DNA of 63,583 nt, filler included, from Octopus bimaculoides (Eukaryota): assembly GCF_001194135.2 (NCBI RefSeq). It is 4 parts of 4 records of this genome, joined end to end, with 100 filler letters (N's around TTAATTAATTAA, not from the genome) between each part and the next. Parts side by side here need not be neighbours in the genome. Positions count along the whole stretch, not along the records: positions 1 to 24,721 come from NC_068988.1; 3 more parts are not named here. The stretch is one strand, 5' to 3'. The translations under genes were made by a program, and so were the position numbers. This document shows positions 1-21,352 of this stretch, in pieces. Below the pieces are notes generated by a model, which worked only from the letters and a program-made list of their open reading frames with translations, searched no databases and was not told the DNA's origin. Numbering within the stretch: position 1 is the stretch's first letter; each line of letters begins with the position of its first letter.

Positions 1-710
1 AACAGGGTGGACGCACTGATCAGGGTGAAAAGGGCGTGGCTGGAGGAACCGGAGGAAGCAAGGAAAGGGATAGCGGCAGTGTGTCGGCTGGGTGACTCCA
101 AACTGAAGGAGCTACATGCTATGCACCACTTGGGGGTGGATAGGACCCTGTATCTGGCGAAAATGGTTGATGCTAACGTCACTAAGAGAAACGTTAAGAA
201 AGTGGTCGCAAAATGTGACAGATGCCAGTCCATTGACTCCGCCCCGGGTGGGCATGAGCAGGGGAACCTCTCAGTAGAGGGCAACTGGAGGAGACTGGCT
301 GTGGATGTGATGCACTACCGTCAGGAAATGTATCTCAGCATGGTTGACTGTGGGCCAGGCCGTCTGGCCATTTGGAGGGAGCTGAGGACAGGCATTGCCG
401 ATGAGATTGCCCGCATTCTGAACGGGATATTCTTGGAGAAGGGTCCTGTGGAAGAACTGCTAATGGACAACGGGGCGGCATTTCGTTCGGAAGCGTTGGG
501 AGAGATGCTTGACCTGTGGAAGGTGCGACGATTATTTAGAGCGGCGCATAGGCCGAGTGGCAATGGAATCGTTGAGAGGCACCATCGACGATCAAGGCCA
601 TGGCTGAAAGGGGGCACATTTCGCCCCTGGAAGCGGTCTACTGGTACAACATGTCTCCCCGAACCGGACAAGCGGAAGAGTCTGTGCCGCACAGAGCGGT
701 GTTCAAATAT
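1..710 (+). mobile_element. Ty3/Gypsy-type LTR retrotransposon pol remnant (integrase), frameshifted, runs into an N gap
   Basis: GC-rich island. Translation shows a zinc-binding HHCC region (LHAMHHLG...CDRC) and a DDE core (LAVDV...LLMDNGAAF...NGIVERHH). A 1-bp frameshift near 588 joins ORF 7 to ORF 600 (intact reading would be ...HHRTIKAMAERGHISPLEAVYWYN). Confidence 0.88.
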
Positions 711-1257
711 NNNNNNNNNNNNNNNNNNNNNNNNNNNNNNNNNNNNNNNNNNNNNNNNNNNNNNNNNNNNNNNNNNNNNNNNNNNNNNNNNNNNNNNNNN
801 NNNNNNNNNNNNNNNNNNNNNNNNNNNNNNNNNNNNNNNNNNNNNNNNNNNNNNNNNNNNNNNNNNNNNNNNNNNNNNNNNNNNNNNNNNNNNNNNNNNN
901 NNNNNNNNNNNNNNNNNNNNNNNNNNNNNNNNNNNNNNNNNNNNNNNNNNNNNNNNNNNNNNNNNNNNNNNNNNNNNNNNNNNNNNNNNNNNNNNNNNNN
1001 NNNNNNNNNNNNNNNNNNNNNNNNNNNNNNNNNNNNNNNNNNNNNNNNNNNNNNNNNNNNNNNNNNNNNNNNNNNNNNNNNNNNNNNNNNNNNNNNNNNN
1101 NNNNNNNNNNNNNNNNNNNNNNNNNNNNNNNNNNNNNNNNNNNNNNNNNNNNNNNNNNNNNNNNNNNNNNNNNNNNNNNNNNNNNNNNNNNNNNNNNNNN
1201 NNNNNNNNNNNNNNNNNNNNNNNNNNNNNNNNNNNNNNNNNNNNATTGGAGTAGGGG

Positions 1258-2660: not shown

Positions 2661-2804
2661 GATCCAAACATTCTGGGGTACTTGACTTTCTGCGTGGCAG
2701 TACTTCAAAAGAAAGGAGCCCCAAACTGACTCACAAGTTTGATCTCATAGATATAGTTCGCTACAATCCAAAACTGGATGCTGACAGTGTAGAAAGTGGA
2801 ATGG
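2661..2804 (+). CDS. PIKFYVE: PIKfyve exon (phase 1-1): xSKHSGVLDFLRGSTSKERSPKLTHKFDLIDIVRYNPKLDADSVESGM
   Basis: tttcaaacag|GATCC...ATGG|gtatgg, 144 nt. SGVLDFLRG resembles vertebrate SGMLSFFRG just upstream of the kinase domain. Confidence 0.8.
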
Positions 2805-3963: not shown

Positions 3964-4019
<56 letters not shown>

Positions 4020-6536
4020 CATACATGTATATATGTATAAATGCTGGTGGCATATAAAAAGCACCCAGCACACTCTGTTTGGGTGGTTGGTGTTAGGAAT
4101 GGCATCCAGCCACAGAAACCATGTCACAACAGACAATTGGAATTTGGACAGCTTTCAGCTGGCCAGTTCCATGTCAAACTGTCCAGCCCATGCCATGAAA
4201 AGTGGACATTAAATGGTAATGATGATATACACACACACACACACACACACATATATTTGGTTGGCAAGATAGTAATTTTGTTTTTCGCAAATAGACAGAG
4301 TTAGGATATTTTTGAATGACTTTTGTCAATGTTATGATTTTTACCTTTTGACATTTGTTAGCCATTACTGTTAGCTTACTTTTGAAGCAAATTGTGCAAA
4401 TTTTTGTTTCCAGCTGTTAGTTCAGTGTCAATTTTAACATGGAGTGCAAAAATGAACCTTTTTGCCATATTTTGTGTTTTTATTTCCATAAATGCAAGAC
4501 AGCTACTGAGGCTCACAAAGAGATATTTGAAGTTTATGGTACTGATTGCTTAACAGAACGCACATGTCAGAAATAGTTTGAAAAATTCCATTCTGGAGAT
4601 TTTTCACTCAAAGATGACCAACGTTCTGGTCGACCTACTGAAATTGATGATGACCGAATCAAAGCCATAATTGAATCTGATTGTCATATAACTATGCGAG
4701 AGATTGCAGAGGGGTTAAATGTATCACACACAACAATTGGAAATCACTTAAAATGTCTTGGACTAGTTAAGAAGCTCGATATTTGGGTTCCACATAAATT
4801 GAAAGAGATTCACTTAACACAACAAATCAGTATTTGCGATGTGCATCCCAAACACAATGAAATCGACCTTTTTTTATGAAACGAATCATCACTGGTGATG
4901 AAAAATGGATTGTCTAAAATAGCATCAATCGAAAACAATCATGGTCCAAGCATAATGAACCAGCACAAACCACATCGAATGCTGAATTGCATAAAAAAAG
5001 GTCATGCTGTCAGTTTGGTGGGATTACAAAGGTGTTGTGTATTTTGAGCTGCTTCCAAGGAACAAAACAATCAATTCAGATGTTTGTTGTCAACAACTAC
5101 TGAAACTGGGAGAAACAATATGAAATGTGTCCTTTTTTTAAGACAGCAGTGTGTGATTTGAGAGAGGTTTGACTGCTATTTCTAATAAGCTAATTGACCA
5201 TTTAGAGACGACATTGTTGGTTCATATTGTCTAGAAAGTTGTGAATGGTAGAAGATTACAACTAATACAGGAAGTATGACTCAATCTTAGTGACAAACCT
5301 TGTTTAGATGAATTAAGAAGATAACGTGTTTTAATTCTTGAAAGCTATTTTATTTCAATAAAGACAGCATCAAGAGGGATTACTTTTGCAGGCTCATAAA
5401 TGACAAGATGAACCAATATCATAGAGGTGGCATTTTTGTACACTTTCCAGTTTCGAAGTACAAATGCCCAAAAGCCAAATTTAAACCAGTTTCACAGTAG
5501 CAATGTTATAAAGATTAGGACAGGGTCATCATTACCAATTAGCAGTTCAATGAAAATATTACCCTTGATAATTAGTATATAGTCATTGTTAATATGTTAA
5601 TGTAGAGTAGACATGTGATGAGATCAGTGGGAAGATATGTTGGCAAAGAAATAGATGGTTGACACAAAATAAGTTTGGTTATGTTGCAAAGGAAGAAATA
5701 GAACAGCATGATAAAAGTGGTGATGAGGATGATGTTAATGATAAAGATGATGATGGTGAGAATTTTACTTTGTACAGCAAAAAATATCACTAGAATGCTT
5801 GTGGTGGCAGTTGATATTATGATTGTAATAAACAAGATGTTGTTTGTCTTGTAATGCATGTAATTATGATGAATACACTGTTTGTTGCACATGTATGCTT
5901 TGTAATCTTAGTGTTTGCTTTGCATGTTAACATTTTATGAATTGTATGCTATTTCATAAAGCCATTTACTAATGTGTCTTGTCCAGTAGTTCAGCTAGCT
6001 GCAATAATACATGTCTTGTGTTCATGGTGTTTTGGTATTTTTTTTTTCTTTTAATCAACTGAAATTTATATTGTACAGTTTCCTCAGACTTTTGAAAGTT
6101 CAATTATTAGCTGTTTTTAACTAAAAAATGTTCTTAATTTTCCAGCAGCTTTTGTAATTTGAAAAATTTTTTTAGCCATTTCTCAATGTTTGGGTAATTG
6201 GAAAAATTTTGTTAAGATTGATGTGATTTTATGCCTGTCCTGTATATGTAATATAATGTGTAGCTAGCATCATGTCATAGTGATTCTGTCCACAGTTATT
6301 ATTAACTTGAAACATTTTCATTTTCCACATATATGCAATATGTGATTATACACTCGTCTACAGATGCAGATAGCATATTCACTTTTACAGAATCAGAGCA
6401 ATAATAATTATACAGTCTATGTAGTTACATTTACTAATATAAAGTTTTGCATACATATATTCCTTGAGTGTTTGTTGAGATGGTGTTACCAATACAATTT
6501 CTACACTTTGTCTTTTTCAGTTTTCTACAATATATT

Positions 6537-6591
<55 letters not shown>

Positions 6592-6667: not shown

Positions 6668-6717
<50 letters not shown>

Positions 6718-9700
6718 TTGTGTGAGTGTATACATAGAAACTTAATAAATATACTACTTATTTTGGTAGACTTGTACATTTTCTAGGGGGAAAAAAATGA
6801 AGATAAGAGTGATTAAAAATTAAACTCCTTAACTTAATCAAAAGATTAGTTTGATACAAATTCAACCCTTTTTAATATAAATATTATGTTTTTTCCCCCA
6901 TTTGATATTAAATAGAACTTACAGCCTCCTTGGTAAATTATGTTCAGAAAAGCAGTTGATATTATATGTCTCTTAAATTGAAAAAAAAGAAGCATTATAT
7001 TTGTCAAATGAAAATATCTATTTAAGAGATTTGATGCCACATGTAGGTATGACATGTATTGAATGTAATGTATTGGATGTGTAATGTGGAATTGCTTAAA
7101 AGCAGTGTGCAAGTGAGCTGAGAGAGCATATGGGCATTAAAGACATCAGCTGAAATCTGCAAGAGAGATGATTGCACTGGCAAAGATGACATATGATGTG
7201 GATAGATAATGAGTGTCAGTTGAAAACAGTAATTCTGGCTATGGGCAGTGGAAGAGGATGATCAAATATGGTTACAGAAAGATGTGATAAAGTCAAATCT
7301 GAAGATGTTGGACCTGCCCCAGATGACATAACAAAAGATTGAGTTGAGTGGTGATACAATATTGCTGACTTATATTATCAGTTGGATGGGTCTTATTGTT
7401 CAAGCAGACCTGTGGCACAGAAGTTACTGATCAAAAAAGTATGGAAGTGACCTATGGGTCCACTGGTAACTAGTCAATATTGTATTTCACTCGGGGATTG
7501 TACCGTGTCATAAAATGTGTGGTTGAGTGGGATGCAGGCCTGGACATGTTCAATTTTTTTTTTTACTTGTCTAATCTGTTTTTGATTCTGTTGAGACTGG
7601 GCAAAATTTGAACTCCAATATTCTATTTTCTTGAGACAAACAATCATTGTACATCAATGTGCTTGTTATAAATGTGTACATATCATTATTCCTCAATATT
7701 TTCCTCCAGATGTTAATGACGGAACTAGTTCAATTCCTGTTGATGGGGAGAAGAGCAAACCCTGCAAGGTGGCCATTAACCCACATATTGACATCCGTAA
7801 GTCCTCCATCATATTTTGTTTCTAATTCAACATTTCCTCCTACTTTATTCTTTTCTTCATTTTCCATCTTTCAAATCATTTTTTGTTTTCATCTTCTTTT
7901 TCTTATTACTTCTTCCTCTTGCTATTTCATTATCTTCATAATTTTTGCTGCACTTTTTTTGTTCACTTCATCTTTTTCTTCATTCTCATTTTCCCCTAGC
8001 TTCTTTATTGTCAGTGGTACCTACCCACCCTGCTGTCTTTACTGTTATACTTCCTTTGTTCATAAATCAATGCTTCAAAAGAACATTTATTACCGAGTAA
8101 CGTAACAAGCAAAATAATATAATCACTACCTTATAACTCCTGTAAATAGAATGTTTTCTGGTATCTGTTTCTCTTGATATCATTAGACAGATAAGTCAAT
8201 CTATCTGATTTCATCAGCACCAGAGAAAAACTCAATCCAATTTGAAGAAAGATGAGTCTAAAAGATTGTGATTTAATTAACAAAACATTTTTTTCTTAAT
8301 TATTGTAGCTTTAATTTGTTTTCCATTTTCTAGAGTTTTCCGATTCCTCATCTCGTTTCTATTGCCGTGTACATTTCGCTGAACATTTCAGACAACTGCG
8401 CTCTTTGGTATTTCCTGCCGGAGAAGACGTGTAAGTAACTGTAACAATCTAGTTTTTGTTGCAACGAGGGATTTGAGTTCAGATTTGACACCTCACACCT
8501 GTAATATCTTCATTCAAATTTTTGCATATGTAGGAAAATAAATTTTCGTTTTTAAGTCTTGAAGTCTCATGTGGGAATAAGATATTATTGTCAGGAAGTT
8601 GGCACAAGCAAATCCCAAAACCTAGTTTTCAGTGATGAAGTAATGCTAACAACAGCAGCAACAACAATAATGATGATAATAATAAATAATCCTTTCTACT
8701 AAAGACACAAGGCCTGAAATTTTGTAGGGGGGGTGACTAGTTAATTACATCAACCCTAGTGCTTAACTGGTACTTATTTTATCAACCCCAAGAGGATGAA
8801 AGGCAAAGTTGATCTTGACAGAATGTGAATCAAAATACTACTGAGCATCTTTCCCGGCATGCTAATGATTCTGCCAGCTCACTGCCTTAATAATGATAAG
8901 AACAACAATAATAATGATGATAATTGTCATTTCAAATTTGACACTTGGTCAGCTGTTTCAGGGAGAAGAGTTTAGTCAATATCATTGACCCCAGTACTTG
9001 ACTAGTACCCTAATTTATTGACCCCACCAAAAGGATGAAAGGCAAAGTTACATTTTTAGATGAGGAATTCAGCTGCTGCGGAAAGATGTTTTCTAGTTAC
9101 ATCAGGCTTAGAATTCACCAAGGGAAGGTGTGTCAGAAGAAGGTGATTCAACAGTGTGGGTGGAAAAACCAGAAGATGTGTGACCAGAACCTCCTGGAAA
9201 GAAACCATAGCAAGGGTCATTCAACAGTCGAATTGGAACAGCCAGGAAAAGAGATAGGCGTGAAGAAGCCAAAGGTTAAGTGACTGAAGGCAAATGATGC
9301 AGCTAGCTATAAGAAATTTGATGACAAGGTAGCAAGAATGACCACCAAATTCAAAGGGGATGATGATTTAAAGGGAAATTTGGCAGGGTGGTCATTCACC
9401 TGCTGACATTGGTTGATGCTGCATCGAAGAAACCAAAGAACAAAAAATGGCCAAAGGAAAAAGAAAAAAATACACTCAACACCAGAGCTAAAGACACCCT
9501 TGAAAAGAGGGTGAGGGTGCCACGTCAAAATCGGTAGAGGAGTAGGGGCTGAAACCGGATGTGGTTCCTCCTAATAATGTCCTTAGCCATTGAATCCTAT
9601 AAAGAAGCTGTTGAAGTAGTGAATCACGAAATGTGGTTGGAATTCCTCAGGCAGAATTTGAACTCAGAGCATAATGAGTCAAAAGAAATGCTGCTAAGCA

Positions 9701-12700
9701 TCTTCTGTGCTAAAATTTCTGGCTGCTCACCACCATAATAATAATAATAATGATCTATAACATAAGCAGATAACCACACAAACTTTGGAAGGGAGAACAG
9801 TTGATTAGATCAGCTTCTGTACTTATCTAATACTTATTTTTTGTTATTCTAGAAGGAGGAAAAGTAAAGTCACTGCTAGTAAAATTTGAACAAGATATTA
9901 TAAGGCCTTTCTGCTGACTCTACCATACTAGTAATCTAAAAATACACTTTCTTTTAATAAGTTAGTCAGAGGAGAATGACTGTACCTAAGATCCTTGTAT
10001 ACTCTCCCAGATTGACAAATTTTTTGTGGCCATTGCCCAATCTGTAGGTCAATGTCTACAGGTAAAATGTGAAGTGAGAGGGAATCAGGATTCTTGTCCA
10101 AATGCTTGTGAGTAAACTCTGTTAAAGGCATCCAAAAGCCAGTGTTTGACCTCAGAACATCATCATCATCATCGTTTAACGTTCACTTTCCATGCTGGCA
10201 TGGGTTGGATGTTTTGACCGAGGACTGGTGAGCCAGATGGCTACACCAGGCTCCAATCTGATCTGGCAGAGTTTCTACAGCTGGATGCCCTTCCTAATGC
10301 CAACCACTCCGAGAATGTAGTGGGTGCTTTTATGTGCCACCGGCACAAGGGCCAGTCAGGCGGTACTGGCAACAGCCACACTCAAATGGTATTTTTATGT
10401 GTCACCTGCACAGGAGCCACTCCAGCAGCACTGGCAACACCCTTACTCAAATGTTGAATAGCCATGATTGAATAAAGCTATGATAATTAGAAGTATCCCA
10501 ACCATGATCATTTCATCTTCTATTTTGGTATTCTGGGTTTTTTTTCTTCCAGATATAGTGTATCTATGACCAGGCCTGTCACCAGACTTTGATGCCTGGA
10601 GGGTGCTTCAGAATATTTAAATTTGTATTGTGGGAAGATTTTTGTAAAGTGTATTTTCTAAATCTGAGGGTGCACCATTGAATAGTGAGGGAGTAGTGCT
10701 GTCCAGTGTGCCTCCTTAGCAATGGGCATGTCTAGCACTGAGCTGGATTAAGACCCATAAAGACCGTAAGCACTTAAAAGATTTTGGCGGCCTCATATAT
10801 GTATGCAATTCAAAATATAAACAATTATAAACCATAAAATAAATTTCTAATTTTCAAAATGAAACAAAACTAACAGTAAAGATGGAAAATAATGTTTATT
10901 TTTGTATACTACCACTTTATATTTGAAAAGTTTTCTCCTACTTTTTTTAATTGCAAAGTCTTTGTAATTAACTATGACACCATGACTACTTTGAAATTAT
11001 AGTTCCAATCATATAAACCACTTTCAATACTATTTTAGCAAGTTTAAAGTGATTTCTTTTGTGCTGTAAACTATTTACCATTTCTGTGCTGCCTCACTTC
11101 CCTTGATGGTAATCCCTTCACTTGATAGTAATAACGGTGCCATTTTTTGTCATTTTGGAATATGACCATATTATTCATGTCATGTTTCAGTTTTATTCGC
11201 TCAATGAATCACTGTCAACATTGGTCGGCTAAAGGTGGAAAATCAAGATCAGCTTTTTCAAAGACCTGTGGTAAGTATACATATTTCTGTAGACTTGGCC
11301 TTTTAAATCATAGCTCTAAAAAAATATCTGTTTGGTGTAAATCATGAATGCAAAACAACACACATATATGCATACATACATATACATGTCTGTATGCATA
11401 CACACACATATATTATATATCTGAGTGGTTGGCGTTAGGAAGGGCATCCAGCTGTAGAAACTCTGCCAAATCAGACTGGAGCCTGGTGTTGCCATCCGGT
11501 TTCACCAGTCCTCAGTCAAATCGTCCAACCCATGCTAGCATGGAAAGCGGACGTTAAACGATGATGATGATGATGATGATGATGAGGTGTGGAAGCTGAC
11601 CATTATAAGTTGACATTGATTGTTCTGTTCAGACTTCTCTGAACAAAATGCCCTTGGACTGTAAGTAATGCTGTTGGCATCATCCACTGCCACCAGACTG
11701 CTTCTCTGGGCCTCTACACCAAGTGGTGTACAAGAGTGCAGGCTGCTCACAGTAGCAACTCACTTGCTGGTTGACATCCAACTGTTGTCTGGTGGTACAG
11801 ACATTTTATTTGATCACAATAACCATCAAACAGTTGGTCTATGACTCCTCTGCCTTATCAGTTATCCAATGTCCTGCTGTCAACAGACAGAAGGGGTGAC
11901 TTACTCTTCCTTTTATGGCCTGCCACTGATGTGGGTGCCATACTGCGTATGTATGTATGTATATATANNNNNNNNNNNNNNNNNNNNNNNNNNNNNNNNN
12001 NNNNNNNNNNNNNNNNNNNNNNNNNNNNNNNNNNNNNNNNNNNNNNNNNNNNNNNNNNNNNNNNNNNNNNNNNNNNNNNNNNNNNNNNNNNNNNNNNNNN
12101 NNNNNNNNNNNNNNNNNNNNNNNNNNNNNNNNNNNNNNNNNNNNNNNNNNNNNNNNNNNNNNNNNNNNNNNNNNNNNNNNNNNNNNNNNNNNNNNNNNNN
12201 NNNNNNNNNNNNNNNNNNNNNNNNNNNNNNNNNNNNNNNNNNNNNNNNNNNNNNNNNNNNNNNNNNNNNNNNNNNNNNNNNNNNNNNNNNNNTATATATA
12301 TATAAATCTTTCCAAAAGATTTGAGACATTCCGTTTTTCAAAAAAAATATTTTAAAATAGTTAATAATGTTTAAGAAAATCTTTCTTTAAATATTATGAT
12401 TGAATCAAGTATTTTTTGCAGAAACTTTTAAATACACACACACACACATAAATACATATGTATCATTATCATCATCACCACCATCATCATCATCATCAAC
12501 ATTTAATGTCTATTTTCCATGCTGGTTTGACAGGATCTGGCAATCCGTAAGGCTGTGTCAAGCTCCAATGTCAGCTTTGGTATGGTTTCTATGGCTGGAT
12601 GCCAGCCTCTGTACTCATTTTATGATTCTTAAAAAGAGAATTTTTAGAATTGGATAATAAAATAAATTACTGACACTTGCAACCAACTTGTTTGTGCAAT

Positions 12701-15700
12701 TGCTGCCTTTTGAAAGTTCCCTATAATGGACACCAGTAGGATGATAGGGGTCATCAGAGAGAATGCATACCTGAGCCTATTACTGATGTGATCCCTTTGC
12801 CCCCACTGGATCAGCTGACTAGTATTTAACCATCAACATTCAGTCTTAAGTCCTTTCATCTCAGGAGATCAACACCATTCAAACTGTGGAGTCATGCTGG
12901 TTTGACTTGCCTACAGGCAAACATTATTAACCTGCCTCACACCTATACATCATTTCTCTAACTAGGTTCCATCATCCCTTTGCATCCATTTCCAGTGACT
13001 GGATTTTTTTTTCAAGATGACATAAGTTTGATGATGATGACTCAGGCTGATTAATGACAGCCATCTTCTAAGCATTTTGTAAAGCATGTAGTTTGGTTCT
13101 TTGTTGTTTTCTTCTATTCCACTCCCTCAGTCTTATTGAGAATATTGTTTCTTTGATGTTAAATCCATAATAAATATTGCATACACTTTCTTTTTAAATA
13201 TTAACAAAAGTTTTTTGTTTAATAGTTGTTTACTTACATTCTTAAGGCAACAGATAAAAGCCAAACATTAACTTTAAGAAGTTACAGATGTTTGAGCATC
13301 ATTTAATACCAAAATGCTTGAATAAATATATTTCTTTCAGAGGCACTGGAAAAGATTAAAATTTTGTTTGTGTATATATTGCTTTTTTTATACCATTATT
13401 TGTTATTTTTGTTGAATTTTACAGATAATCGTTTCATCCTGAAACAGATGTCTAATGCAGAAGCAGTTTCTTTCCAAGTGTTCGCACCCAACTATTTCCA
13501 ATACATTACCAAAGCTTACCTAGAACAAGTAAGTCCCTTAATGTTCTGGTTTATAATCCTGGTCATACATTTTACTTCATAAACAATTGCTTTCAGTGAT
13601 CAGACCTGTGATCAAAAGCAGTCCAGCTATGACTATCCAGTTTTATCTTTAGATTACATTGTTCAAATTGTTTTTTTTCTTTTTCTTTTGTAAGATTGAA
13701 TGAGGTTTGGCTGCTACTTCCAGCAGGTTGAGTGGTCATCTAACTGTGCCTTTGTTGGTTCTTGAATGGCCTTTGACATTATTATGAATTAAAGTGAGGA
13801 AGAAAATATATTCTTTGTTGTCATTTGGTACCAGTTATGTCTTAAGCAAGCAAGTCTTTGTAGCATGCAGCTATTCATGTAGCATGGCGCCAATTCATAA
13901 CAGCCGGCAATATGACGTAATGTCGTATTGCCGAGGAAATATAATTGTCGTCTTCCCATTGGTTGAAATAACTGCTCATAGAAATATTCTTTTACTAATT
14001 TTCAGAATTCAAATATGAGTAGTTATTTCAACCAATGGGAAAACAACAATCATATTTCCTCGGCAATACGACATTACGTCATATTGCTGGCTGTTATGAA
14101 TTGGTACCACGTTACATGAATGGCTGCATGCTACACCTTCAATGAAGCCATCAGTGTCCTGTCTTCTTCCCCTCAGACAAAATGTATCTAGGACTACATT
14201 ATACAATCTCTAAGGTGTTTTTTAGATGGTAGAATATGATTTGGAAGAGATTCAGTTGCTAATTTTAACCATTTGAGTGACCACATACAGACTTTCTCAG
14301 AAGTGATTTAGAAAGTAGAGACTAAAATCCTTGATGCTACTGCATTTTAAGATTTCCAGTTTTTCTGCTTTTGTCACCTTTTCATGTCCAGTTTTAAAGG
14401 AACAGCTGCACGATAAAGTGAAGTTGTTCTGATCAGGAAGATAATTTGGATGATATAACATCACATCTCATACTGCTCACACAGCAACAATAATAATTAT
14501 AATTTCCAGGTGATTATTTAATTTGTGATGCACTTTTGCATAGATATGAAGATTTTTAATGTTTTTGTTTTGGTTGTTAATATTTCAGAAACCAACAGTT
14601 CTTGCAAAGATTCTAGGAGTTTATACCATAGGTTTTCGTAACAATCAGACCAGCACAGTAATGAAGCAGGACTTGTTGGTGATGGAGAACTTGTTATACA
14701 ATCGAAAAGTCTCTCAGGTAAACAGCACACTCTTATCTTTGTGTTCTAAATCTGTGTTACTTAATATTGCTATATTCTTCCTTTTTATATCGTGTGTGTG
14801 TGTTTGTGCACCCTTGTCTAGACATCATGTGATGTTTATAAATGAGCATCAACATACAAGCAAGGTTGTTTGTTTCCCGTCTTCCTTGAAAAAATATGTC
14901 TAATTATGGGAAAATATTACCTTGCTTGGAAACAGGTGAAGGTTGGCAACAAAGCCTGTACTCTAATTAAGTAAATTAGTTTAGCTTTGATTCTGACTAG
15001 TTTCTGCTCTCTCACTCTAGATTTAAACCATTCTCATGAGATAGTTTTTCTTTTATTACCATACTGAAAAACAGGACTATGTGAACCAATGGGGTGGCCT
15101 TTACATGGTTAATGATCTTGTAAAAACAGTAGTCAAATATTCCTCAATCACATCCTGTCATCTTAGAAAAGAACATGTTGGATAATATAGGCTTCAGTAC
15201 ACTTGTCTAGAAATAATTGCAATTAATGACAAAGACAAGATTAAAATAATGAACTTCTTACTATTTCCAATCTTTGCTGTGGTATTTGTTTTGTGTGTAA
15301 CAGGCAAGTATATTACATACATGCAATTAGATGCCACTTTCACTGCATTACAATTTCATCATCATCATCGTCATTTAACGTCCGCTTTCCATGCTGGCTT
15401 TCCATGGGTTGGATAGTTTGACAGAGGACTGGCAAGCCAGAAGGCTGCACCAGGCTCAATCTGATCTGGTTTCTACAGTTGGATGCCCTTCCTAACGCCA
15501 ACCACTCTGAGAATGTAGTGGATGCTTTTACGTGCCACTGGCATATGGGCCAGTCAGGCAGTTCTGGCAACAACACACTCAAAAGGTGTTTTTTACGTGC
15601 TACTTGCATGGAAGCCAGTCCAGCGGCACTGGCAACAACCACGCCCAAATGTTGTTTTTCACGTGCCGGTAAGGTAATGCTGGCAACGATCATGCTTGAA

Positions 15701-17324
15701 TGGTGCCTTTAATGTGCCACCAGCACGGGAGCCAATCTGTGGCCCTGGCAATGATCATGCTCGGATGTGCTTTTAATGTTCCACTGACACCAGTGCCAAT
15801 CAGGCAGTACTGTCAGCGGCCACATCAGCAATTTTGATTTGATTTCTTTATATGTAAATATTCCAAATTGGTAGAACCATCCAATTATGCCGTTGTGAAT
15901 ATAAACGACAAACAACTGTATGTTTGATGTTTCTGTTTTATTACACTTTATTAAATTTTTGTCAAAATATTTTCTATTTATAGACGTTTGACTTGAAAGG
16001 ATCTGTTCGAAATCGATTGGTCAATTTATCTGGGAAACAGGAAGAAGAAGTGCTGTTAGATCAGAATTTTCTTCAAGGTGAGTTTTCAGAAATATCAGGA
16101 AATAATTGGTTAAAATTGGGAATTATTGGTTAAAAAACCATTATAGTAGCTTAGCAAAAGGCAACATTCTAATGATTTGTTTTCGGTCTTCTAATAAAGC
16201 ATTTTGATGAGGAACAACAATCTCATTAGGATTGATGTTAATTTTACTGCTGCTGCTTCTGTTATTGTGTATGTGAAGTTTGGGAATCCAGGATTATTGT
16301 TTGCGAGAGACTAGAAAATATTCTAAAAGATTAAAAGCAATGTTAATACAATTTTTAGCAAGTTTCTGGAAGTAGTGGCATGAAGAACTCCTGTCACTAA
16401 ATGTTGTTTGAATCCCTTAGAGCCATATGGTCTTTTTACCATGCAATCTGTCTATGTCCATAGGTTGTAGGGACCGTTACAGTAGAGACAGGCTGAGCAG
16501 ATGCAGTTAGGGCATGACAGATTGAATTATTTGGCATTCATTGGAAGTGATTGTAATTGACATATAATATCATGATCATTTATTTACTATAACAAATACC
16601 AAGATAAAACATGGTAACTTTATATTTCACTGTTGTTTATCTCTGTGTGTTTCTCTCTCTCCCTCTTTCAGTCAGTGTTGACTCTCCTCTCTACATCAGA
16701 CCTCACTCCAAAGCTGTTCTAGCTCAAGCTATCGACAGTGATTCCAAATTTCTAGCCAGCAACTTCATCATGGACTATTCTTTGTTGGTTGGACAGGACG
16801 ATCAAATGAAAGAATTAGTGGTTGGTATTATAGGTAAGTGGATTTTTTTTAATCTATTTTTTTTTCTTGTTTATGCAGTCTGCAATCCTGTCATCCTTAG
16901 GTTCATTCTCACGGTGTGTCTCGTTGGTTGGTGTCTTTACAAAAGCATTTAGTTAACCCAAGATTTGTAAGTCGATTAGCTACATAGAAACTATGTGAAA
17001 GTCTTTTGGATGATTGAACCTGTTCTTGGGTGGCTGTCTTGACTCTTTGCCTCATTTCACACCACCACCTGGCACTTTGGGGCCATTTAATGGACTTCAC
17101 TCTGCTTGAAACAATTGGAACCAGGCCATCAGCGCAAGAATAACTTCTTTCTTTTCTTCCCAATAATTTTAGTTAGGTTTGATGGAAATAGTTTGCAAAC
17201 AAAAGGGAAAGTTTTTGTATGCAAACATGAAAACATTGGGAAGAGATAATTAAAAGAAAATAAAGAGAAAATGCATGAAAAATAAACATGAGTGAATCTG
17301 CTAGCCAGAAACTGTGTGGAAGCT

Positions 17325-17363
<39 letters not shown>

Positions 17364-18124
17364 CATCGCTTCCATGAATGCTTGACAACTGATGTTGATT
17401 TCTTTATGTCCCTGTAACTTAGCAGTTTGGCAAGGGAGACCAATCAAATAACTACTGGGGTAGAATTGTTAACCTAAGCCCTTCAAGGTGGTGCTCCAGT
17501 ATGGTCATAAGTCCAATAGCTGAGACAAGTAACACATAAATAAATCATAACCGACCATCTTAAAAAAGAAGAACATTTTGGACAATGAAATCCTAGATTC
17601 ACTACCTGAAATAAAGATGAGATGGTCCTGGCTGGAATGCCTTAGCTCATAGTTTTGCTCATTTAGAACTAACCTGGAGTTAAATAACGACAACTACACC
17701 ACTGTACTGCAATAACTTTTGAAATGCATCAAAAACACTTCCATTCATGTCTCTTTTAATTGCTACATTTTCTTTATTTCAGATTACATTCGAACATTCA
17801 CATGGGACAAAAAGCTTGAGATGGTTGTAAAAGCCACAGGATTTCTGGGTGGTGCCTGTAAGTTTTATTACATTTCAAGAGTTGTTTCAAATTCTGTTAC
17901 ATAATTTTTACAACTCAGATGTACTTTCATTTAATGAAATTTATAATCTGTTTCTTTTTAACCTTTCTTTTTAATATCATTTTCCTTTTTATATTATTAC
18001 AGCTAAAATGCCAACAGTTGTGTTTCCTGAATTGTACAAGAGTCGGTTCTTAGAAGCCATGGATCGATATTTTCCTCCTGTCCCTGACAGATGGAGTGGG
18101 CTTGGCTATGGACTCGATTATTGA
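2661..18124 (+). CDS. PIKFYVE: PIKfyve/Fab1 1-phosphatidylinositol 3-phosphate 5-kinase, 3' part (last 10 coding exons, complete PIPK kinase domain)
   Basis: Exons 2661-2804, 7710-7796, 8334-8430, 11191-11270, 13425-13528, 14589-14717, 15984-16077, 16672-16833, 17783-17857 and 18003-18124 all have AG/GT boundaries and compatible phases (1094 nt). Family motifs: GGKS, RFILKQ, LAKILGVY, DLLVMENL, FDLKGS.RNR, PLYIRPHSKAVL, MDYSLLVG, GIIDYIRTFTWDKKLEMVVK, PTVV.PELY. Upstream exons lie outside the window or in the gap. Confidence 0.97.
3087..3158 (+). pseudogene. Degenerate tRNA-Glu(CTC) pseudogene or SINE head
   Basis: TCCCAAATAATCTAGTGGTTAGGATTCCACACTCTCACCGCAGCAGCCAAGGTTCAGTTCTCTGTTTGGAAA is collinear with eukaryotic tRNA-Glu-CTC (72 nt, anticodon CTC at 3120-3122). 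T-arm/B-box and stems are damaged. Confidence 0.6.
3215..3590 (+). mobile_element. tRNA-derived SINE (window family D), degenerate
   Basis: Head GTGTAGTAAGAAGTTTGCTTCC..CACATGGTTCCAAGTTCAGTCC, CORE-like CCTTGGG.AAGT, and a body shared with copies near 17320, 19670, 35700 and 61300. Ends approximate. Confidence 0.7.
4075..4226 (+). mobile_element. Retroposon 3' tail (window family B), degenerate, ending in (GAT)n
   Basis: Similar to 11423-11585 (GGTTGG.GTTAGGAA.GGCATCCAG...CATG...GGAC.TTAAA.GATGAT). Confidence 0.7.
4256..5123 (+). mobile_element. Mariner DNA transposon, 3'-truncated, transposase pseudogene
   Basis: TA then TIR-like TTTGGTTGGCAAGATAGTAAT. ATG at 4439 gives MECKNEPFCHILCFYF...SGRP...WVPHKL...IITGDEKW...KVMLSVWWD, with stops and frameshifts. 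Confidence 0.93.
7710..7796 (+). CDS. PIKFYVE: PIKfyve exon: DVNDGTSSIPVDGEKSKPCKVAINPHIDI
   Basis: ttcctccag|AT...ATCC|gtaagt, 87 nt. INPHIDI(Q) corresponds to INPHVELQ. Confidence 0.92.
8334..8430 (+). CDS. PIKFYVE: PIKfyve exon: QFSDSSSRFYCRVHFAEHFRQLRSLVFPAGED
   Basis: ttttctag|AG...GACGT|gtaagt, 97 nt. QFSD..FYCR motif. Confidence 0.95.
8695..8890 (-). mobile_element. tRNA-derived SINE (window family A), CpG-decayed copy
   Basis: Reverse complement matches family A copies at 33852 and 48220 (A-box-like AGCTGGCAGAA, B-box-like GTTCAAATTCC); nearly all CpGs converted to TG/CA. Confidence 0.8.
9065..9480 (+). mobile_element. N-terminal fragment of an RLE-type (HERO/R2/NeSL-like) non-LTR retrotransposon
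   Basis: Frame reads FSCCGKMFSSYIRLRIHQGKVC (C2H2-like finger) then KKPKVK*LKANDAASYKKFDDKV, resembling the KPxIKWPKAN segment of HERO-like elements. Assigned from recall, not a search. Confidence 0.5.
10158..10445 (-). mobile_element. Retroposon 3' region (family B)
   Basis: (CAT)n CGTTTAACG..CTTTCCATGC...GGATGCCCTTCCTAA.GCCAACCACTC, the reverse complement of 11423-11585. Confidence 0.85.
11191..11270 (+). CDS. PIKFYVE: PIKfyve exon (glycine-rich loop): VFIRSMNHCQHWSAKGGKSRSAFSKTC
   Basis: gtttcag|TTTT...TGTG|gtaagt, 80 nt. FIRS...W...GGKS motif. Confidence 0.95.
11423..11585 (+). mobile_element. Retroposon 3' tail (family B), young copy
   Basis: GAGTGGTTGGCGTTAGGAAGGGCATCCAGCTGTAGAAAC...GGAAAGCGGACGTTAAACGATGATG; CpGs retained. 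Confidence 0.85.
12470..12615 (-). mobile_element. Family B tail, degenerate
   Basis: (CAT)n ..TTTAATGTC..TTTTCCATGCTGG...TTTCTA.GGCTGGATGCC. Confidence 0.6.
13425..13528 (+). CDS. PIKFYVE: PIKfyve exon: DNRFILKQMSNAEAVSFQVFAPNYFQYITKAYLEQ
   Basis: ttttacag|ATAAT...GAACAA|gtaagt, 104 nt. Contains the ATP-binding Lys of RFILKQ. Confidence 0.96.
13859..14135. mobile_element. Foldback MITE (277 bp) with 122-bp terminal inverted repeats and TGT...ACA ends
   Basis: Arms 13859-13980 and 14014-14135 are reverse complements with about 10 mismatches, all transitions; 33-nt spacer; flanks TCTT/CCTT (3 of 4 match). Confidence 0.8.
14589..14717 (+). CDS. PIKFYVE: PIKfyve exon: KPTVLAKILGVYTIGFRNNQTSTVMKQDLLVMENLLYNRKVSQ
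   Basis: tatttcag|AAACC...TCTCAG|gtaaac, 129 nt, phase 0-0. Confidence 0.96.
15355..15830 (-). mobile_element. Family B retroposon copy with internal ~65-bp tandem subrepeats
   Basis: Same tail as 10158, followed by about 5 degenerate units of GCCAGTC..GC..TGGCAAC.A.CA.GCTC.AA.G.TG.TTTT.A.GTGC. Confidence 0.8.
15984..16077 (+). CDS. PIKFYVE: PIKfyve exon: TFDLKGSVRNRLVNLSGKQEEEVLLDQNFLQ
   Basis: tatttatag|ACG...CAAG|gtgagt, 94 nt. DLKGS catalytic motif. Confidence 0.96.
16672..16833 (+). CDS. PIKFYVE: PIKfyve exon: VSVDSPLYIRPHSKAVLAQAIDSDSKFLASNFIMDYSLLVGQDDQMKELVVGII
   Basis: ctctttcag|TC...ATAG|gtaagt, 162 nt. MDYSLLVG motif. Confidence 0.97.
17320..17535 (+). mobile_element. Family D SINE 3' half
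   Basis: (TG)n then CTTGACAACTGATGTTG...TAACTTAGCAGTTTGGCAA...GGTGGTGCTCCAGTATGG, as in 3400-3590. Confidence 0.65.
17783..17857 (+). CDS. PIKFYVE: PIKfyve exon (activation loop): DYIRTFTWDKKLEMVVKATGFLGGA
   Basis: tttatttcag|ATTAC...GCCT|gtaagt, 75 nt. Confidence 0.97.
18003..18124 (+). CDS. PIKFYVE: PIKfyve terminal coding exon: SKMPTVVFPELYKSRFLEAMDRYFPPVPDRWSGLGYGLDY*
   Basis: attacag|CTAAA...TATTGA; TGA at 18122-18124. Matches the PIKfyve C-terminus. Confidence 0.96.
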
Positions 18125-19669: not shown

Positions 19670-20075
19670 CAAGGCATAGGTATGGCTGTTAAAAAACTTG
19701 CTCCTCAACTACATAGTAGCATTATGTGACAACCTTGGGCAAGTGTCTTCTATTAAAGCTACAGGCTAACAAAAGCCTTGTGAGTGGAGTCGGTTGAGGG
19801 GAAAGTGAAAGAAGCCTGTTGTGTGTTTGTGTGAGTGTGTGTTCTTGTCTTGACATTGTGTGATAGGTGTAATGAGTGTCACTGAAATACAAGGAGTGTC
19901 AATCATTTCCAGTATTCTGCAAATTCATGTTTGGCCTTGGTGAAACATTATCTTGATTTGAAACAAGTGAGGGTTAGTGATGGGTAGGGTATCTAACTAT
20001 AGAAAATCTGTTTCAATAAACTCTGTCTAATCCATCCAAGCATGGGAAAGGGGATGTTGAAACGATGATGATGAT
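19670..20075 (+). mobile_element. Family D SINE head/CORE joined to a family B tail
   Basis: GGCATAGGTATGGCTG...CCTTGGGCAAGTGTCTTCTA...GCCTTGTGAGTGGA...(TG)n...CATGGGAAAGGGGATGTTGAAACGATGATG. Confidence 0.7.
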
Positions 20076-20085
20076 GCTATATATA

Positions 20086-21352
20086 TTGGGTCATCCCATA
20101 AATGATGCAGTTTTTTTATACATCTTTTATTTTTCAAAATTAAGATAAAGTTCTTCTTTAATCTAAAATATACCCCCATTCATTTTCTACAATGCTCTCC
20201 CATCTATCTGGTAGTCTTTCAAGGCCCCTCTTCCAAAGTTCACTTGTCTGTGATGAAAAATACTCCTCCAGTACTGTTCTGACCTCATCTACAGAATTCA
20301 TATTTATTCCGTCCAAATGATTTTGAAGACTGTGGAATAAATGATAATCAGATGGGGCAATGTCTGGCGAATATGGTGGGTGGGGCATCGTTTCCCATTC
20401 AAACTATTCCAGTCTTTGGAATGTCATCCTTGTATGTGGCTGAGCATTATCCTGAATGAAGGACACCTTTCATCTTGAAAGCAAAGATGGTTCTTTTTCT
20501 TCTAGCACTGGCTTGTGTTGCTCAAGCTGCTCATGGTAGATCTCCTTTGTTATTGTTTGGTTTGGGTCTAAAAGTTCAAAGTGGACTAAACCTTTCATAT
20601 CCCACCAAACAGATAACAACACCTTACGGGGGTGTTTAGCCTGGGGTGCCAGTGTTTCTCCTTTTTCTATCCACTGTCTTTGGTGTTTGACATTTTTATA
20701 GAGACCCTATTTCTCGTTACTATTCACTATTCTGTCCAAAAAAGGTTCATTCATGGGACGTGACAGCAAAGAAAAGTACACATTCACTTTCTGCATGCAA
20801 TTAGACTTGGAAAATTTGTGACGAACCCATTGACCCAATTTGCTGACTTTTCTGATGGCACACAGGTGTCAATGAATGGTTAAATGACCAAATCCTAGCT
20901 TCTCTGCTAGTTCCTCAGCAGTTACTATAAAATTTACTTCCACCAAGGTTTGCAGGATGTCCTCGTCGAGCTGAACAGATTTTCGACAACAAGGCACATC
21001 TACGTTGTAGTTTACGGCTCAGAATTTCTGGAAACGCCGTTGTCATTGGCTTACACTTATTGTCCGATCCCCATATACTGCATTAATATTCCTCCACTTT
21101 CCATTGCATTGTTGCCTTTATTGAACTCATAAAGTAAAATATGCTGAATATGCTCCTTTGTCACTTTCATTATAGCTTTGAAAAAATAACTGTTAAAATC
21201 GAACTGCACTCTTTAAAACTTGCACTAAAAATAAGGACAAGGTAAAATTACTACCTGTTTTTATAGCAAGTTGATGCAGGTAGTTTATCCTGTCCCCCTC
21301 CAACTTTTAATTCATGCAATTGAAAAAATGCATTATTTATGGGATGATCCAA
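20086..21352 (-). mobile_element. Full-length mariner transposon (1267 bp) with decayed transposase
   Basis: TIRs TTGGGTCATCCCATAAATGATGCAG (20086) and its near-complement ending at 21352, both flanked by TA. Transposase 21170->20158: MKVTKEHIQHILLYEFNKG...QDNAQPH...HPPYSPDIAPSDYHLF, with several stops and frameshifts. Confidence 0.95.

What the first reader, a model, noticed from the sequence alone, without database searches (positions are those of the whole stretch)
11234..11251. PIKfyve glycine-rich loop is genomically GGKS-R-S: candidate restorative A-to-I recoding site (A11246, AGA>GGA)
Seen: codons GGT GGA AAA TCA AGA TCA (11234-11251) encode GGKSRS. Established, from recalled sequences: human (GGKSGA), Drosophila and yeast Fab1 (GGKSGS) have Gly here in the ATP-binding loop; coleoid cephalopods recode mRNAs extensively by ADAR; Arg(AGA)>Gly(GGA) is a single A-to-I event. 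A11246 has an A 5' and a G 3', a context ADAR favours. Inference: the gene may depend on editing to produce the canonical loop, making editing level a tunable control on PI(3,5)P2 synthesis. Caveats: plant FAB1 has Asn at this position, so Gly is not invariant; I could not find a local editing-complementary sequence by eye.
Basis: partly seen in the sequence, partly recalled or inferred. Interest (0 to 1): 0.75.

Follow-up and report, generated by a model that had tools for sequence, protein, structure and literature searches.

The report
Octopus PIKfyve ATP-loop arginine substitution
The octopus gene for the lipid kinase PIKfyve does encode arginine where most species have glycine in its ATP-binding loop, but the same change is fixed in organisms that do little or no RNA editing, so it is most likely an ordinary tolerated substitution and not a site that depends on editing.

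Summary
Bases 11234-11251 read GGT GGA AAA TCA AGA TCA (GGKSRS), inside an 80-nt exon (11191-11270) of the Octopus bimaculoides PIKfyve/Fab1 kinase domain. The Arg is R1827 of XP_014788859.1. A11246 has A on its 5' side and G on its 3' side. Arg is genomic in O. bimaculoides, O. sinensis and O. vulgaris, so it is not an assembly error or SNP. Non-cephalopod molluscs have Gly; the closest mollusc-like transcript uses GGA. The site is therefore formally a "potential restorative" A-to-G site.

Nothing I could test supports actual editing or dependence on it.
- The position is not invariant: among 131 other Fab1/PIKfyve kinase domains it is G 113, K 13, R 3, N 1, A 1.
- The identical GGKSRS occurs in a starfish and in ADAR-less gut fungi. 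Filamentous ascomycetes have Lys.
- A11246 is predicted unpaired in pre-mRNA and mRNA folds, and no complementary partner beats shuffled controls.
- Only 2.3-3.4% of potential restorative sites are edited in octopuses, at a median level below 2.5%.
- The one PIKfyve site in the accessible published list is a 1.2% "diversifying" site.

Matched DNA/RNA reads were not available, so editing is not excluded. Best reading: an ordinary lineage-specific G-loop substitution.

The parts
11246..11246 (+). The adenosine in question: first base of the AGA codon for Arg1827 of O. bimaculoides PIKfyve. A-to-G would give GGA (Gly).
   Evidence: The closest mollusc-like transcript (L001/P0168) has GGA at this codon.
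11234..11251 (+). G-loop codons GGT GGA AAA TCA AGA TCA = GGKSRS
   Evidence: It aligns to GGKSGA of human PIKfyve 7k2v_P.
11191..11270 (+). 80-nt PIKfyve exon encoding (V)FIRSMNHCQHWSAKGGKSRSAFSKTC(D), bounded by AG and GTAAGT
   Evidence: The spliced product is identical to XP_014788859.1.
2661..2804 (+). Upstream PIKfyve exon (GSKHSGVLDFLRGS...SVESGM)
   Evidence: The peptide is present in P0310/P0160.
7710..7796 (+). Upstream PIKfyve exon (DVNDGTSSIPVDGEKSKPCKVAINPHIDI). The Thr marks the window as O. bimaculoides.
8334..8430 (+). PIKfyve exon at the start of the PIPK domain (QFSDSSSRFYCRVHFAEHFRQLRSLVFPAGEDV)
13425..13528 (+). PIKfyve exon (DNRFILKQMSNAEAVSFQVFAPNYFQYITKAYLEQ). It holds the FILK lysine that corresponds to the ATP-binding Lys of PIPKs; that correspondence is from my own knowledge.
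14589..14717 (+). PIKfyve exon (KPTVLAKILGVYTIGFRNNQ...NRKVSQ)
15984..16077 (+). PIKfyve exon (TFDLKGSVRNRLVNLSGKQEEEVLLDQNFLQ)
16672..16833 (+). PIKfyve exon (SVDSPLYIRPHSK...MDYSLLVGQDDQMKELVVGII)
   Evidence: It was the query that retrieved the Octopus proteins.
17783..17857 (+). PIKfyve exon (DYIRTFTWDKKLEMVVKATGFLGGA)
18003..18124 (+). Last PIKfyve coding exon (SKMPTVVFPELYKSRF...GLGYGLDY, then the stop codon)
10158..10312 (+). Upstream arm of an inverted SINE-like repeat pair in the intron before the G-loop exon
11420..11575 (-). Downstream arm of the same inverted pair, starting 150 nt after the exon. 147 of 155 nt pair, with duplex energy -280 kcal/mol. The site lies in the loop between the arms, not in the duplex.

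Best explanation
This is the glycine-rich ATP-binding loop of Octopus bimaculoides PIKfyve (Fab1, type III PIP kinase). An ancestral Gly codon (GGA in the nearest mollusc-like transcript) became AGA (Arg1827) through one G-to-A transition that is now fixed in the genus Octopus. The Arg enzyme is the working enzyme. A basic residue at this loop position has been fixed independently in several other Fab1/PIKfyve lineages, so it is compatible with PI(3,5)P2 synthesis. At most it shifts ATP handling (Km or kcat), as natural G-loop differences do in the related PI5P4K isoforms. A-to-I editing at A11246 is absent or at the low, promiscuous level typical of coleoid coding A's, and the gene does not depend on it.

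Shown here: the exon and gene identity, the fixation of genomic Arg in three Octopus species, recurrence of Arg/Lys elsewhere, and the lack of predicted dsRNA. Inferred: catalytic competence of the Arg form, and absence or low level of editing.
For: - Identity: the exon model reproduces the annotated protein exactly. It hits PF01504 and 7k2v_P.
- Genomic fixation: GGKSRS is present in O. bimaculoides XP_014788859.1, O. sinensis X1/X2/X3 and O. vulgaris CAI9727079.1.
- Tolerance of a basic residue: the column composition in 131 non-octopus kinase domains is G113 K13 R3 N1 A1. The identical GGKSRS occurs in Acanthaster planci XP_022098381.1 and in a 90%-identity cluster that includes a Piromyces sp. 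E2 protein. GGKTKS occurs in Trichophyton and Colletotrichum Fab1.
- Departing from consensus is not special in this protein. Octopus also differs at columns that are 95-97% conserved (M37, L129, Q163), and no A-to-G change could repair those.
- No ADAR substrate is predicted. A11246 is unpaired in 7 of 8 pre-mRNA folds. It sits in a hairpin loop with P(paired) 0.01-0.13 in spliced mRNA folds. The best complementary duplex within 12 kb of pre-mRNA is no better than 25 of 40 shuffled queries.
- Base rate: only 2.26% (bimac) to 3.44% (octopus) of potential restorative sites are edited, with a median level below 2.5% (Jiang & Zhang 2019, PMC6881472).
- From established knowledge: PIKfyve is broadly expressed and essential in the animals where it has been tested, while high-level coleoid editing is mostly neural. 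The unedited Arg form must therefore work in non-neural tissues.
Against: - No matched RNA and DNA reads could be examined, so editing at 11246 is untested.
- All non-cephalopod molluscs sampled have Gly (Mactra, Physella, Magallana, Batillaria, and the Logan transcript P0168). The change is exactly the GGA-to-AGA type that the harm-permitting model predicts.
- The nearest-neighbour context (5' A, 3' G) is ADAR-friendly.
- PIKfyve mRNA is edited somewhere in O. bimaculoides neural tissue: FYV1-6548, 1.2%, more than 400 reads. The transcript is therefore exposed to ADAR, and I could not map that coordinate.
- G-loop differences can change PIPK activity 100- to 2000-fold (Clarke & Irvine 2013, PMC3749867), so R versus G could matter functionally.
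- A 155-bp intronic dsRNA lies 150 nt from the exon and could recruit ADAR.
- RNA structure prediction is a weak predictor of editing.
Confidence: 0.8

Rival explanations
1. Restorative (harm-permitting) A-to-I recoding. ADAR converts A11246 to inosine in a sizeable fraction of transcripts, mainly neural ones. This re-creates the canonical GGKSGS loop, so that the editing level sets the amount of fully active PIKfyve.
For: - The ancestral-type codon GGA differs from AGA only at this base.
- Gly is present in all sampled non-cephalopod molluscs and in 86% of homologues.
- The 5' A and 3' G context is favourable.
- Restorative sites are enriched and more highly edited than synonymous sites in coleoids (PMC6881472 and PMC8382921).
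- PIKfyve (FYV1) transcripts carry at least one editing site in bimac.
- A long intronic dsRNA next to the exon could recruit ADAR.
Against: - Arg or Lys at this position is fixed in a starfish and in fungi that lack ADAR, so Gly is not required.
- The site is predicted single-stranded, and no editing-complementary sequence beats chance.
- The base rate of any editing at such sites is 2-3%, and only about 13% of edited restorative sites exceed a 20% level; that figure is for squid.
- The site does not appear among the FYV1 entries in the stored part of the bimac list, though that list is cut and limited to sites with more than 400 reads.
- Editing is mostly neural, whereas PIKfyve is needed in all cells (established knowledge).
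Confidence: 0.05
2. Low-level, functionally neutral editing. A11246 is deaminated in a few percent of transcripts, like tens of thousands of other coleoid coding A's, with no consequence for PI(3,5)P2 control. This is compatible with the best explanation for the protein.
For: - About 1-3.5% of coding A's per class are detectably edited in octopus neural tissue, with a median level below 2.5%.
- The ADAR neighbour context is favourable.
- Another FYV1 site is edited at 1.2%.
Against: - The site is predicted unpaired.
- It is not seen in the accessible part of the published list.
- There is no direct data.
Confidence: 0.1
3. Artefact: an assembly or sequencing error, or a private SNP, in this scaffold. 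On this reading the real octopus gene encodes Gly.
For: The window comes from a gapped draft assembly, with N runs at 711-1244 and 11968-12292.
Against: The same GGKSRS is found in independently assembled and annotated genomes of O. sinensis and O. vulgaris, as well as in the O. bimaculoides RefSeq protein.
Confidence: 0.01

Closest known systems
PIKfyve/Fab1 orthologues that naturally carry a basic residue at this loop position: Acanthaster planci XP_022098381.1 (GGKSRS), the protein cluster that includes Piromyces sp. E2 (GGKSRS), filamentous ascomycete Fab1 (GGKTKS), and plant-type FAB1 (GGKSN)
   Same: Same gene family and the same alignment column in the glycine-rich loop. The starfish and the gut-fungus cluster have the same hexapeptide.
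   Different: These are independent substitutions in distant lineages. Their codons and any editing status were not examined. None of these variants has been compared biochemically with the Gly form, as far as I could find.
Restorative / harm-permitting A-to-I recoding sites of coleoid cephalopods (Jiang & Zhang 2019, PMC6881472; Shoshan et al. 2021, PMC8382921)
   Same: It is a genomic A in a coleoid coding sequence. A-to-G gives the amino acid found in outgroup molluscs, and the GGA-to-AGA history fits a G-to-A substitution. By those papers' definition it is probably a 'potential restorative site', although the cephalopod ancestral nodes they use were not sampled here.
   Different: Membership requires observed editing, which has not been shown. 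No dsRNA context is predicted. The ancestral states within cephalopods (squid, cuttlefish, Nautilus) could not be obtained.
Natural G-loop variation among PI5P4K alpha/beta/gamma isoforms (Clarke & Irvine 2013, PMC3749867)
   Same: Same PIPK superfamily and the same structural element. Isoform-specific G-loop sequences change Km(ATP) from about 4 to about 94 uM and kcat by up to about 2000-fold, yet all isoforms are kept by evolution.
   Different: This is a different subfamily (type II versus type III). The exact residue correspondence rests on a gapped HMMER alignment and on my recollection of the alpha and beta sequences. There is no measurement for PIKfyve.

Membership tests
PIKfyve / Fab1 (type III PIP kinase) catalytic domain | PIPK catalytic domain (Pfam PF01504) above the curated threshold | tested here: met
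   150.2 bits against a cut-off of 27, E=9.3e-44.
PIKfyve / Fab1 (type III PIP kinase) catalytic domain | Orthology to characterised PIKfyve rather than to type I/II PIPKs | tested here: met
   Human PIKfyve 7k2v_P scores E=4.8e-102, against about 1e-16 for PI5P4Ks. The sequence is identical to RefSeq '1-phosphatidylinositol 3-phosphate 5-kinase' of Octopus. The full-length protein P0160 begins with a Cys-rich segment that I recognise as FYVE-like. The related transcript product P0168 carries DEP, Cpn60_TCP1 and PIP5K hits.
PIKfyve / Fab1 (type III PIP kinase) catalytic domain | Canonical G-loop GGKSG(S/A) | tested here: not met
   The loop is GGKSRS. This variant also occurs in other bona fide orthologues (starfish, gut fungi), so it does not argue against membership.
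PIKfyve / Fab1 (type III PIP kinase) catalytic domain | Other catalytic and activation-loop motifs (FILKQM Lys, MDYSLLVG, IIDYIRTFTWDKKLE) | tested here: met
   All are present in the spliced product and align to 7k2v_P.
ADAR A-to-I recoding site (restorative class) | A in genomic DNA, with G in a fraction of cDNA reads from the same animal | not testable with these tools
   No read data were available. No octopus transcript-derived protein covers the kinase domain in the searchable collections.
ADAR A-to-I recoding site (restorative class) | The edited codon restores an ancestral amino acid | tested here: inconclusive
   Gly is present in all sampled non-cephalopod molluscs, with GGA in the nearest transcript. 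Squid, cuttlefish and Nautilus sequences, which define the ancestral nodes used in the literature, could not be obtained.
ADAR A-to-I recoding site (restorative class) | ADAR-compatible nearest neighbours (5' not G; 3' G favoured) | tested here: met
   The context is 5' A, 3' G. It is shared by 13% of A's in this CDS.
ADAR A-to-I recoding site (restorative class) | Target adenosine embedded in a double-stranded RNA structure or paired to an editing-complementary sequence | tested here: not met
   The site is unpaired in 7 of 8 pre-mRNA folds and lies in a hairpin loop in mRNA folds with P(paired) at most 0.13. The best long-range duplex is within the shuffle distribution. The nearby 155-bp SINE duplex does not include the site. 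These are predictions only.
ADAR A-to-I recoding site (restorative class) | Listed in published coleoid editomes | tested here: inconclusive
   The only entry found is FYV1-6548 (bimac, 'diversifying', 1.2%), in a truncated list given in transcript coordinates. There were no hits in the other held supplements. The main site tables (Liscovitch-Brauer 2017, Birk 2023) are not held.

The most novel reading that the evidence does not exclude
Arg1827 of octopus PIKfyve is re-coded to Gly by ADAR at an appreciable level that depends on tissue or temperature. Neurons would then carry two forms of the only PI(3,5)P2-synthesising kinase, with different ATP-loop chemistry. This would be a restorative edit inside a catalytic loop that couples editing activity to endolysosomal phosphoinositide output.
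Probability: 0.04. Interest if true: 0.55.

Novelty: already known. Interest (0 to 1): 0.15.

Why it matters
If the site were edited, it would be a concrete and assayable example of restorative recoding inside an enzyme's catalytic loop. That bears on the open debate over whether coleoid recoding is adaptive or merely harm-permitting, and it would link RNA editing to lysosomal lipid signalling.

As the evidence stands, the finding is a lineage-specific amino-acid substitution in an annotated gene. It shows that "non-consensus residue plus an A-to-G fix" is a weak predictor of editing: about 97-98% of such sites in octopus are not edited, and here the "abnormal" residue recurs in organisms that do not rely on editing.

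One small by-product may be useful. A basic residue at this G-loop position has arisen repeatedly in Fab1/PIKfyve (octopus, starfish, gut fungi, filamentous ascomycetes). A biochemist interested in ATP handling by PIKfyve could exploit this.

Tried and rejected
- The search for homologous proteins with the spliced kinase domain and with a shorter loop-centred query returned no cephalopod sequence. Its lists held only short proteins, so it could not give squid, cuttlefish or Nautilus states.
Re-run with a single-exon translation, it found the Octopus cluster.
- The look-up of encoding contigs for O. sinensis P0160 found nothing on record. I therefore made no DNA-level comparison between species of synonymous or flanking conservation around the site.
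- The closest non-octopus transcript (P0168, Logan SRR12008146) could not be assigned to a species. It is no closer to octopus than bivalves are (69% versus 65-68% in the kinase domain), so I treat it only as 'mollusc-like'.
- Literature. No paper combines PIKfyve with cephalopod editing. Supplements of Shoshan 2021, Alon 2015, Zhang 2023 and Vallecillo-Viejo 2020 hold no FYV1/PIKfyve entry. Liscovitch-Brauer 2017 and Birk 2023 are not held. The one hit, FYV1-6548, is in Trinity-contig coordinates and cannot be mapped to the window.
- I considered whether the flanking inverted SINE pair is the editing-complementary structure. I rejected this for the site itself, because 11246 lies in the 1.1-kb loop between the arms. 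It could still act as an ADAR-recruiting element.
- The artefact/SNP explanation is rejected by agreement among three species.
- Rfam and tRNA scans of the window found nothing.
- I did not run structure prediction. The tool reports no side-chain geometry, so it could not discriminate R from G.
Full report
**Observation**

Window 11234-11251 reads GGT GGA AAA TCA AGA TCA, which translates to GGKSRS. A11246 is the first base of the AGA codon, flanked by A (11245) and G (11247). The hexapeptide lies in an 80-nt exon, 11191-11270, with an AG acceptor and a GTAAGT donor. Using tblastn with homologues and inspection of splice sites, I built a ten-exon model on the + strand: 2661-2804, 7710-7796, 8334-8430, 11191-11270, 13425-13528, 14589-14717, 15984-16077, 16672-16833, 17783-17857 and 18003-18124, the last ending at the stop codon. 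The 286-aa product of the last eight exons hits Pfam PF01504 (PIP5K) at E=9e-44. It also hits the human PIKfyve kinase domain of cryo-EM entry 7k2v at E=5e-102, where the aligned loop is GGKSGA.

**Gene and organism**

An exhaustive search with the translation of exon 16674-16832 found a 2068-aa protein whose C-terminal 286 residues are identical to my exon model. Its 90%-identity cluster contains PIKfyve of three species: Octopus sinensis (XP_036361555.1 and two further isoforms), O. vulgaris (CAI9727079.1) and O. bimaculoides (XP_014788859.1). Only the O. bimaculoides protein contains the window's exon peptide DVNDGTSSIP; the others have Ser in place of Thr. The window is therefore O. bimaculoides, and the residue is Arg1827. 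All five full-length Octopus proteins read GGKSRS.

**Conservation of the Gly**

Non-cephalopod molluscs all have GGKSGS: Mactra, Physella, Magallana, Batillaria, and an unidentified Logan transcript that is the best non-octopus match. That transcript uses GGA for the Gly, so octopus AGA is one G-to-A transition away, and an A-to-I event would restore it exactly. In the terms of Jiang & Zhang (2019) this is probably a "potential restorative site", although I could not sample the cephalopod ancestral nodes they use.

The column is not invariant, however. In a MAFFT alignment of 131 non-octopus Fab1/PIKfyve kinase domains it is G 113, K 13, R 3, N 1, A 1.
- The identical hexapeptide GGKSRS occurs in the crown-of-thorns starfish Acanthaster planci (XP_022098381.1).
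- It also occurs in a 90%-identity cluster that includes a Piromyces sp. E2 protein (anaerobic gut fungi).
- The Lys group is GGKTKS of filamentous ascomycetes, for example Trichophyton and Colletotrichum.

Fungi have no ADAR, and echinoderms are not known for extensive recoding; both statements are established knowledge. A basic side chain here is therefore compatible with a working Fab1/PIKfyve.

Departing from consensus is also not special in this protein. Octopus differs from columns conserved at 85% or more at five places: M37, R51, L129, Q163 and I200. Three of these, at 95-97% conserved columns, cannot be repaired by any A-to-G change.

**Tests for an ADAR substrate**

ADARs deaminate adenosines that lie within double-stranded RNA.
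- In pre-mRNA folds of eight window sizes (±40 to ±750 nt), A11246 is unpaired in seven. Its pairing probability ranges from 0 to 0.54, with inconsistent partners.
- In folds of the spliced mRNA it sits in the apical loop of a small hairpin, with pairing probability 0.01-0.13.
- A duplex search of the 51 nt around the site against 12 kb of the pre-mRNA gave a best energy of -34.0 kcal/mol. Shuffled queries gave -35.4 ± 2.4, and 25 of 40 shuffles did as well or better.
- The only strong dsRNA nearby is an inverted pair of SINE-like repeats that brackets the exon: 10158-10312 and 11420-11575, with 147 of 155 nt paired and duplex energy -280 kcal/mol. The site lies in the 1.1-kb loop between the arms, not in the duplex. 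That duplex is a plausible target for intronic hyper-editing and could recruit ADAR to the region, but it is not an editing-complementary sequence for 11246.
- The 5' A / 3' G context is favourable but common: 31 of 245 A's in this stretch of CDS have 5' A/U and 3' G.

Structure prediction is weak evidence, but none of it points toward editing.

**Literature and base rates**

Restorative or "harm-permitting" editing in coleoids is an established concept and is debated (Jiang & Zhang 2019, PMC6881472; Shoshan et al. 2021, PMC8382921). Their source data give the fraction of potential restorative sites that are edited at all: 0.0344 in O. vulgaris, 0.0226 in O. bimaculoides, 0.026 in squid and 0.0355 in cuttlefish. 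Median levels are below 2.5%. In squid, only 13% of edited restorative sites exceed a 20% level. The prior that a given such site is edited is therefore a few percent, and well under 1% that it is highly edited.

No held paper links PIKfyve to cephalopod editing. The stored part of Jiang & Zhang's bimac list is truncated and limited to sites with more than 400 reads. It contains one PIKfyve site, FYV1-6548, classed as diversifying and edited at 1.2%. Its coordinate refers to a Trinity contig, and I could not map it. This shows that the transcript is seen by ADAR at low level. It says nothing decisive about 11246. The other supplements I could read hold no entry, and the primary site tables are not held.

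**Functional reasoning**

In the related PI5P4K isoforms, natural G-loop differences account for much of a 100- to 2000-fold spread in lipid-kinase activity. They also shift Km(ATP) between about 4 and 94 uM (Clarke & Irvine 2013, PMC3749867). R versus G could therefore well alter PIKfyve kinetics. That paper also shows, however, that non-canonical G-loops are maintained in functional enzymes.

PIKfyve is the only source of PI(3,5)P2 and is needed in essentially all cell types in the animals where it has been tested, while high-level coleoid editing is mainly neural; both statements are established knowledge. An enzyme that needed editing would fail in non-neural tissue. The Arg form must therefore be catalytically competent. 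This last step is inference.

**Verdict**

The proposal that the gene depends on restorative editing is not supported by any test I could run, and two of those tests count against it: recurrence of Arg/Lys in non-editing lineages, and the lack of any predicted duplex. The most likely explanation is an ordinary, fixed, lineage-specific G-loop substitution (confidence 0.8). I put low-level incidental editing at about 0.1 and functionally meaningful restorative editing at about 0.05.

The decisive test is a pile-up of matched DNA and RNA reads at this base. Two further tests are an alignment of squid, cuttlefish and Nautilus PIKfyve, and R-versus-G kinase assays. None of these could be done with the tools available here.

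Noticed in passing
window 10158-10312 (+) and 11420-11575 (-): An inverted pair of SINE-like repeats brackets the G-loop exon. It is about 155 nt long and 92-93% complementary, with predicted duplex energy -280 kcal/mol. It probably forms an intronic dsRNA that could be hyper-edited or could affect splicing or back-splicing of the 80-nt exon. Further copies lie at 15357-15654 (+), with fragments at 12485-12525 and 20026-20076.
   Followed up: partly
window 16767 (ATC codon, Ile in ...SNFIMDYSLL...): This is the only other residue in the kinase domain that departs from a column conserved at 85% or more (Val) and could be 'restored' by one A-to-G change (ATC to GTC). Its neighbours are C and T, a less ADAR-friendly context. 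Ile also occurs in 15 of the aligned homologues.
   Followed up: partly
Jiang & Zhang 2019 source data (PMC6881472), entry FYV1-6548: A published low-level (1.2%) 'diversifying' editing site in O. bimaculoides PIKfyve mRNA with more than 400 reads. For it to be coding, the contig must carry at least about 360 nt before the start codon. That would place it at or downstream of the G-loop codon, possibly inside this window. The coordinate could not be mapped.
   Followed up: partly
window 20161-21212 (- strand): A degenerate Mos1/mariner-type transposase broken over several frames (PF01359 at E=1.4e-22; HTH_48 at E=9e-6), downstream of the PIKfyve stop codon.
   Followed up: partly
window 4577-4876 (+ strand): A 100-aa open frame with weak transposase-type helix-turn-helix matches (HTH_32, HTH_Tnp_Tc3_2, all below Pfam thresholds). 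It lies inside a PIKfyve intron and is probably a decayed Tc1/mariner element.
   Followed up: partly
window 1-710: A long open frame running off the 5' edge with a weak integrase-core (rve) match (E=0.0066, below threshold). It ends at an assembly gap and is probably a retroelement remnant in an intron.
   Followed up: partly
window 711-1244 and 11968-12292: Two runs of N (534 and 325 bases), which are assembly gaps. The second lies in the intron about 700 nt downstream of the G-loop exon, so part of the sequence that could pair with the exon is missing from the analysis.
   Followed up: no
window 13469-13471 (Val in ...AEAVSFQVF..., residue 73 of the 286-aa model): The O. vulgaris protein CAI9727079.1 has Gly here. 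It is the only difference from the window in the last 286 residues. Val to Gly is a T-to-G change, so it is not editing-like.
   Followed up: no
window 3970-4015, 4230-4251, 6541-6588, 6677-6712, 17327-17358: Long dinucleotide microsatellites, (TA)n, (CA)n and (TG)n, in PIKfyve introns.
   Followed up: no
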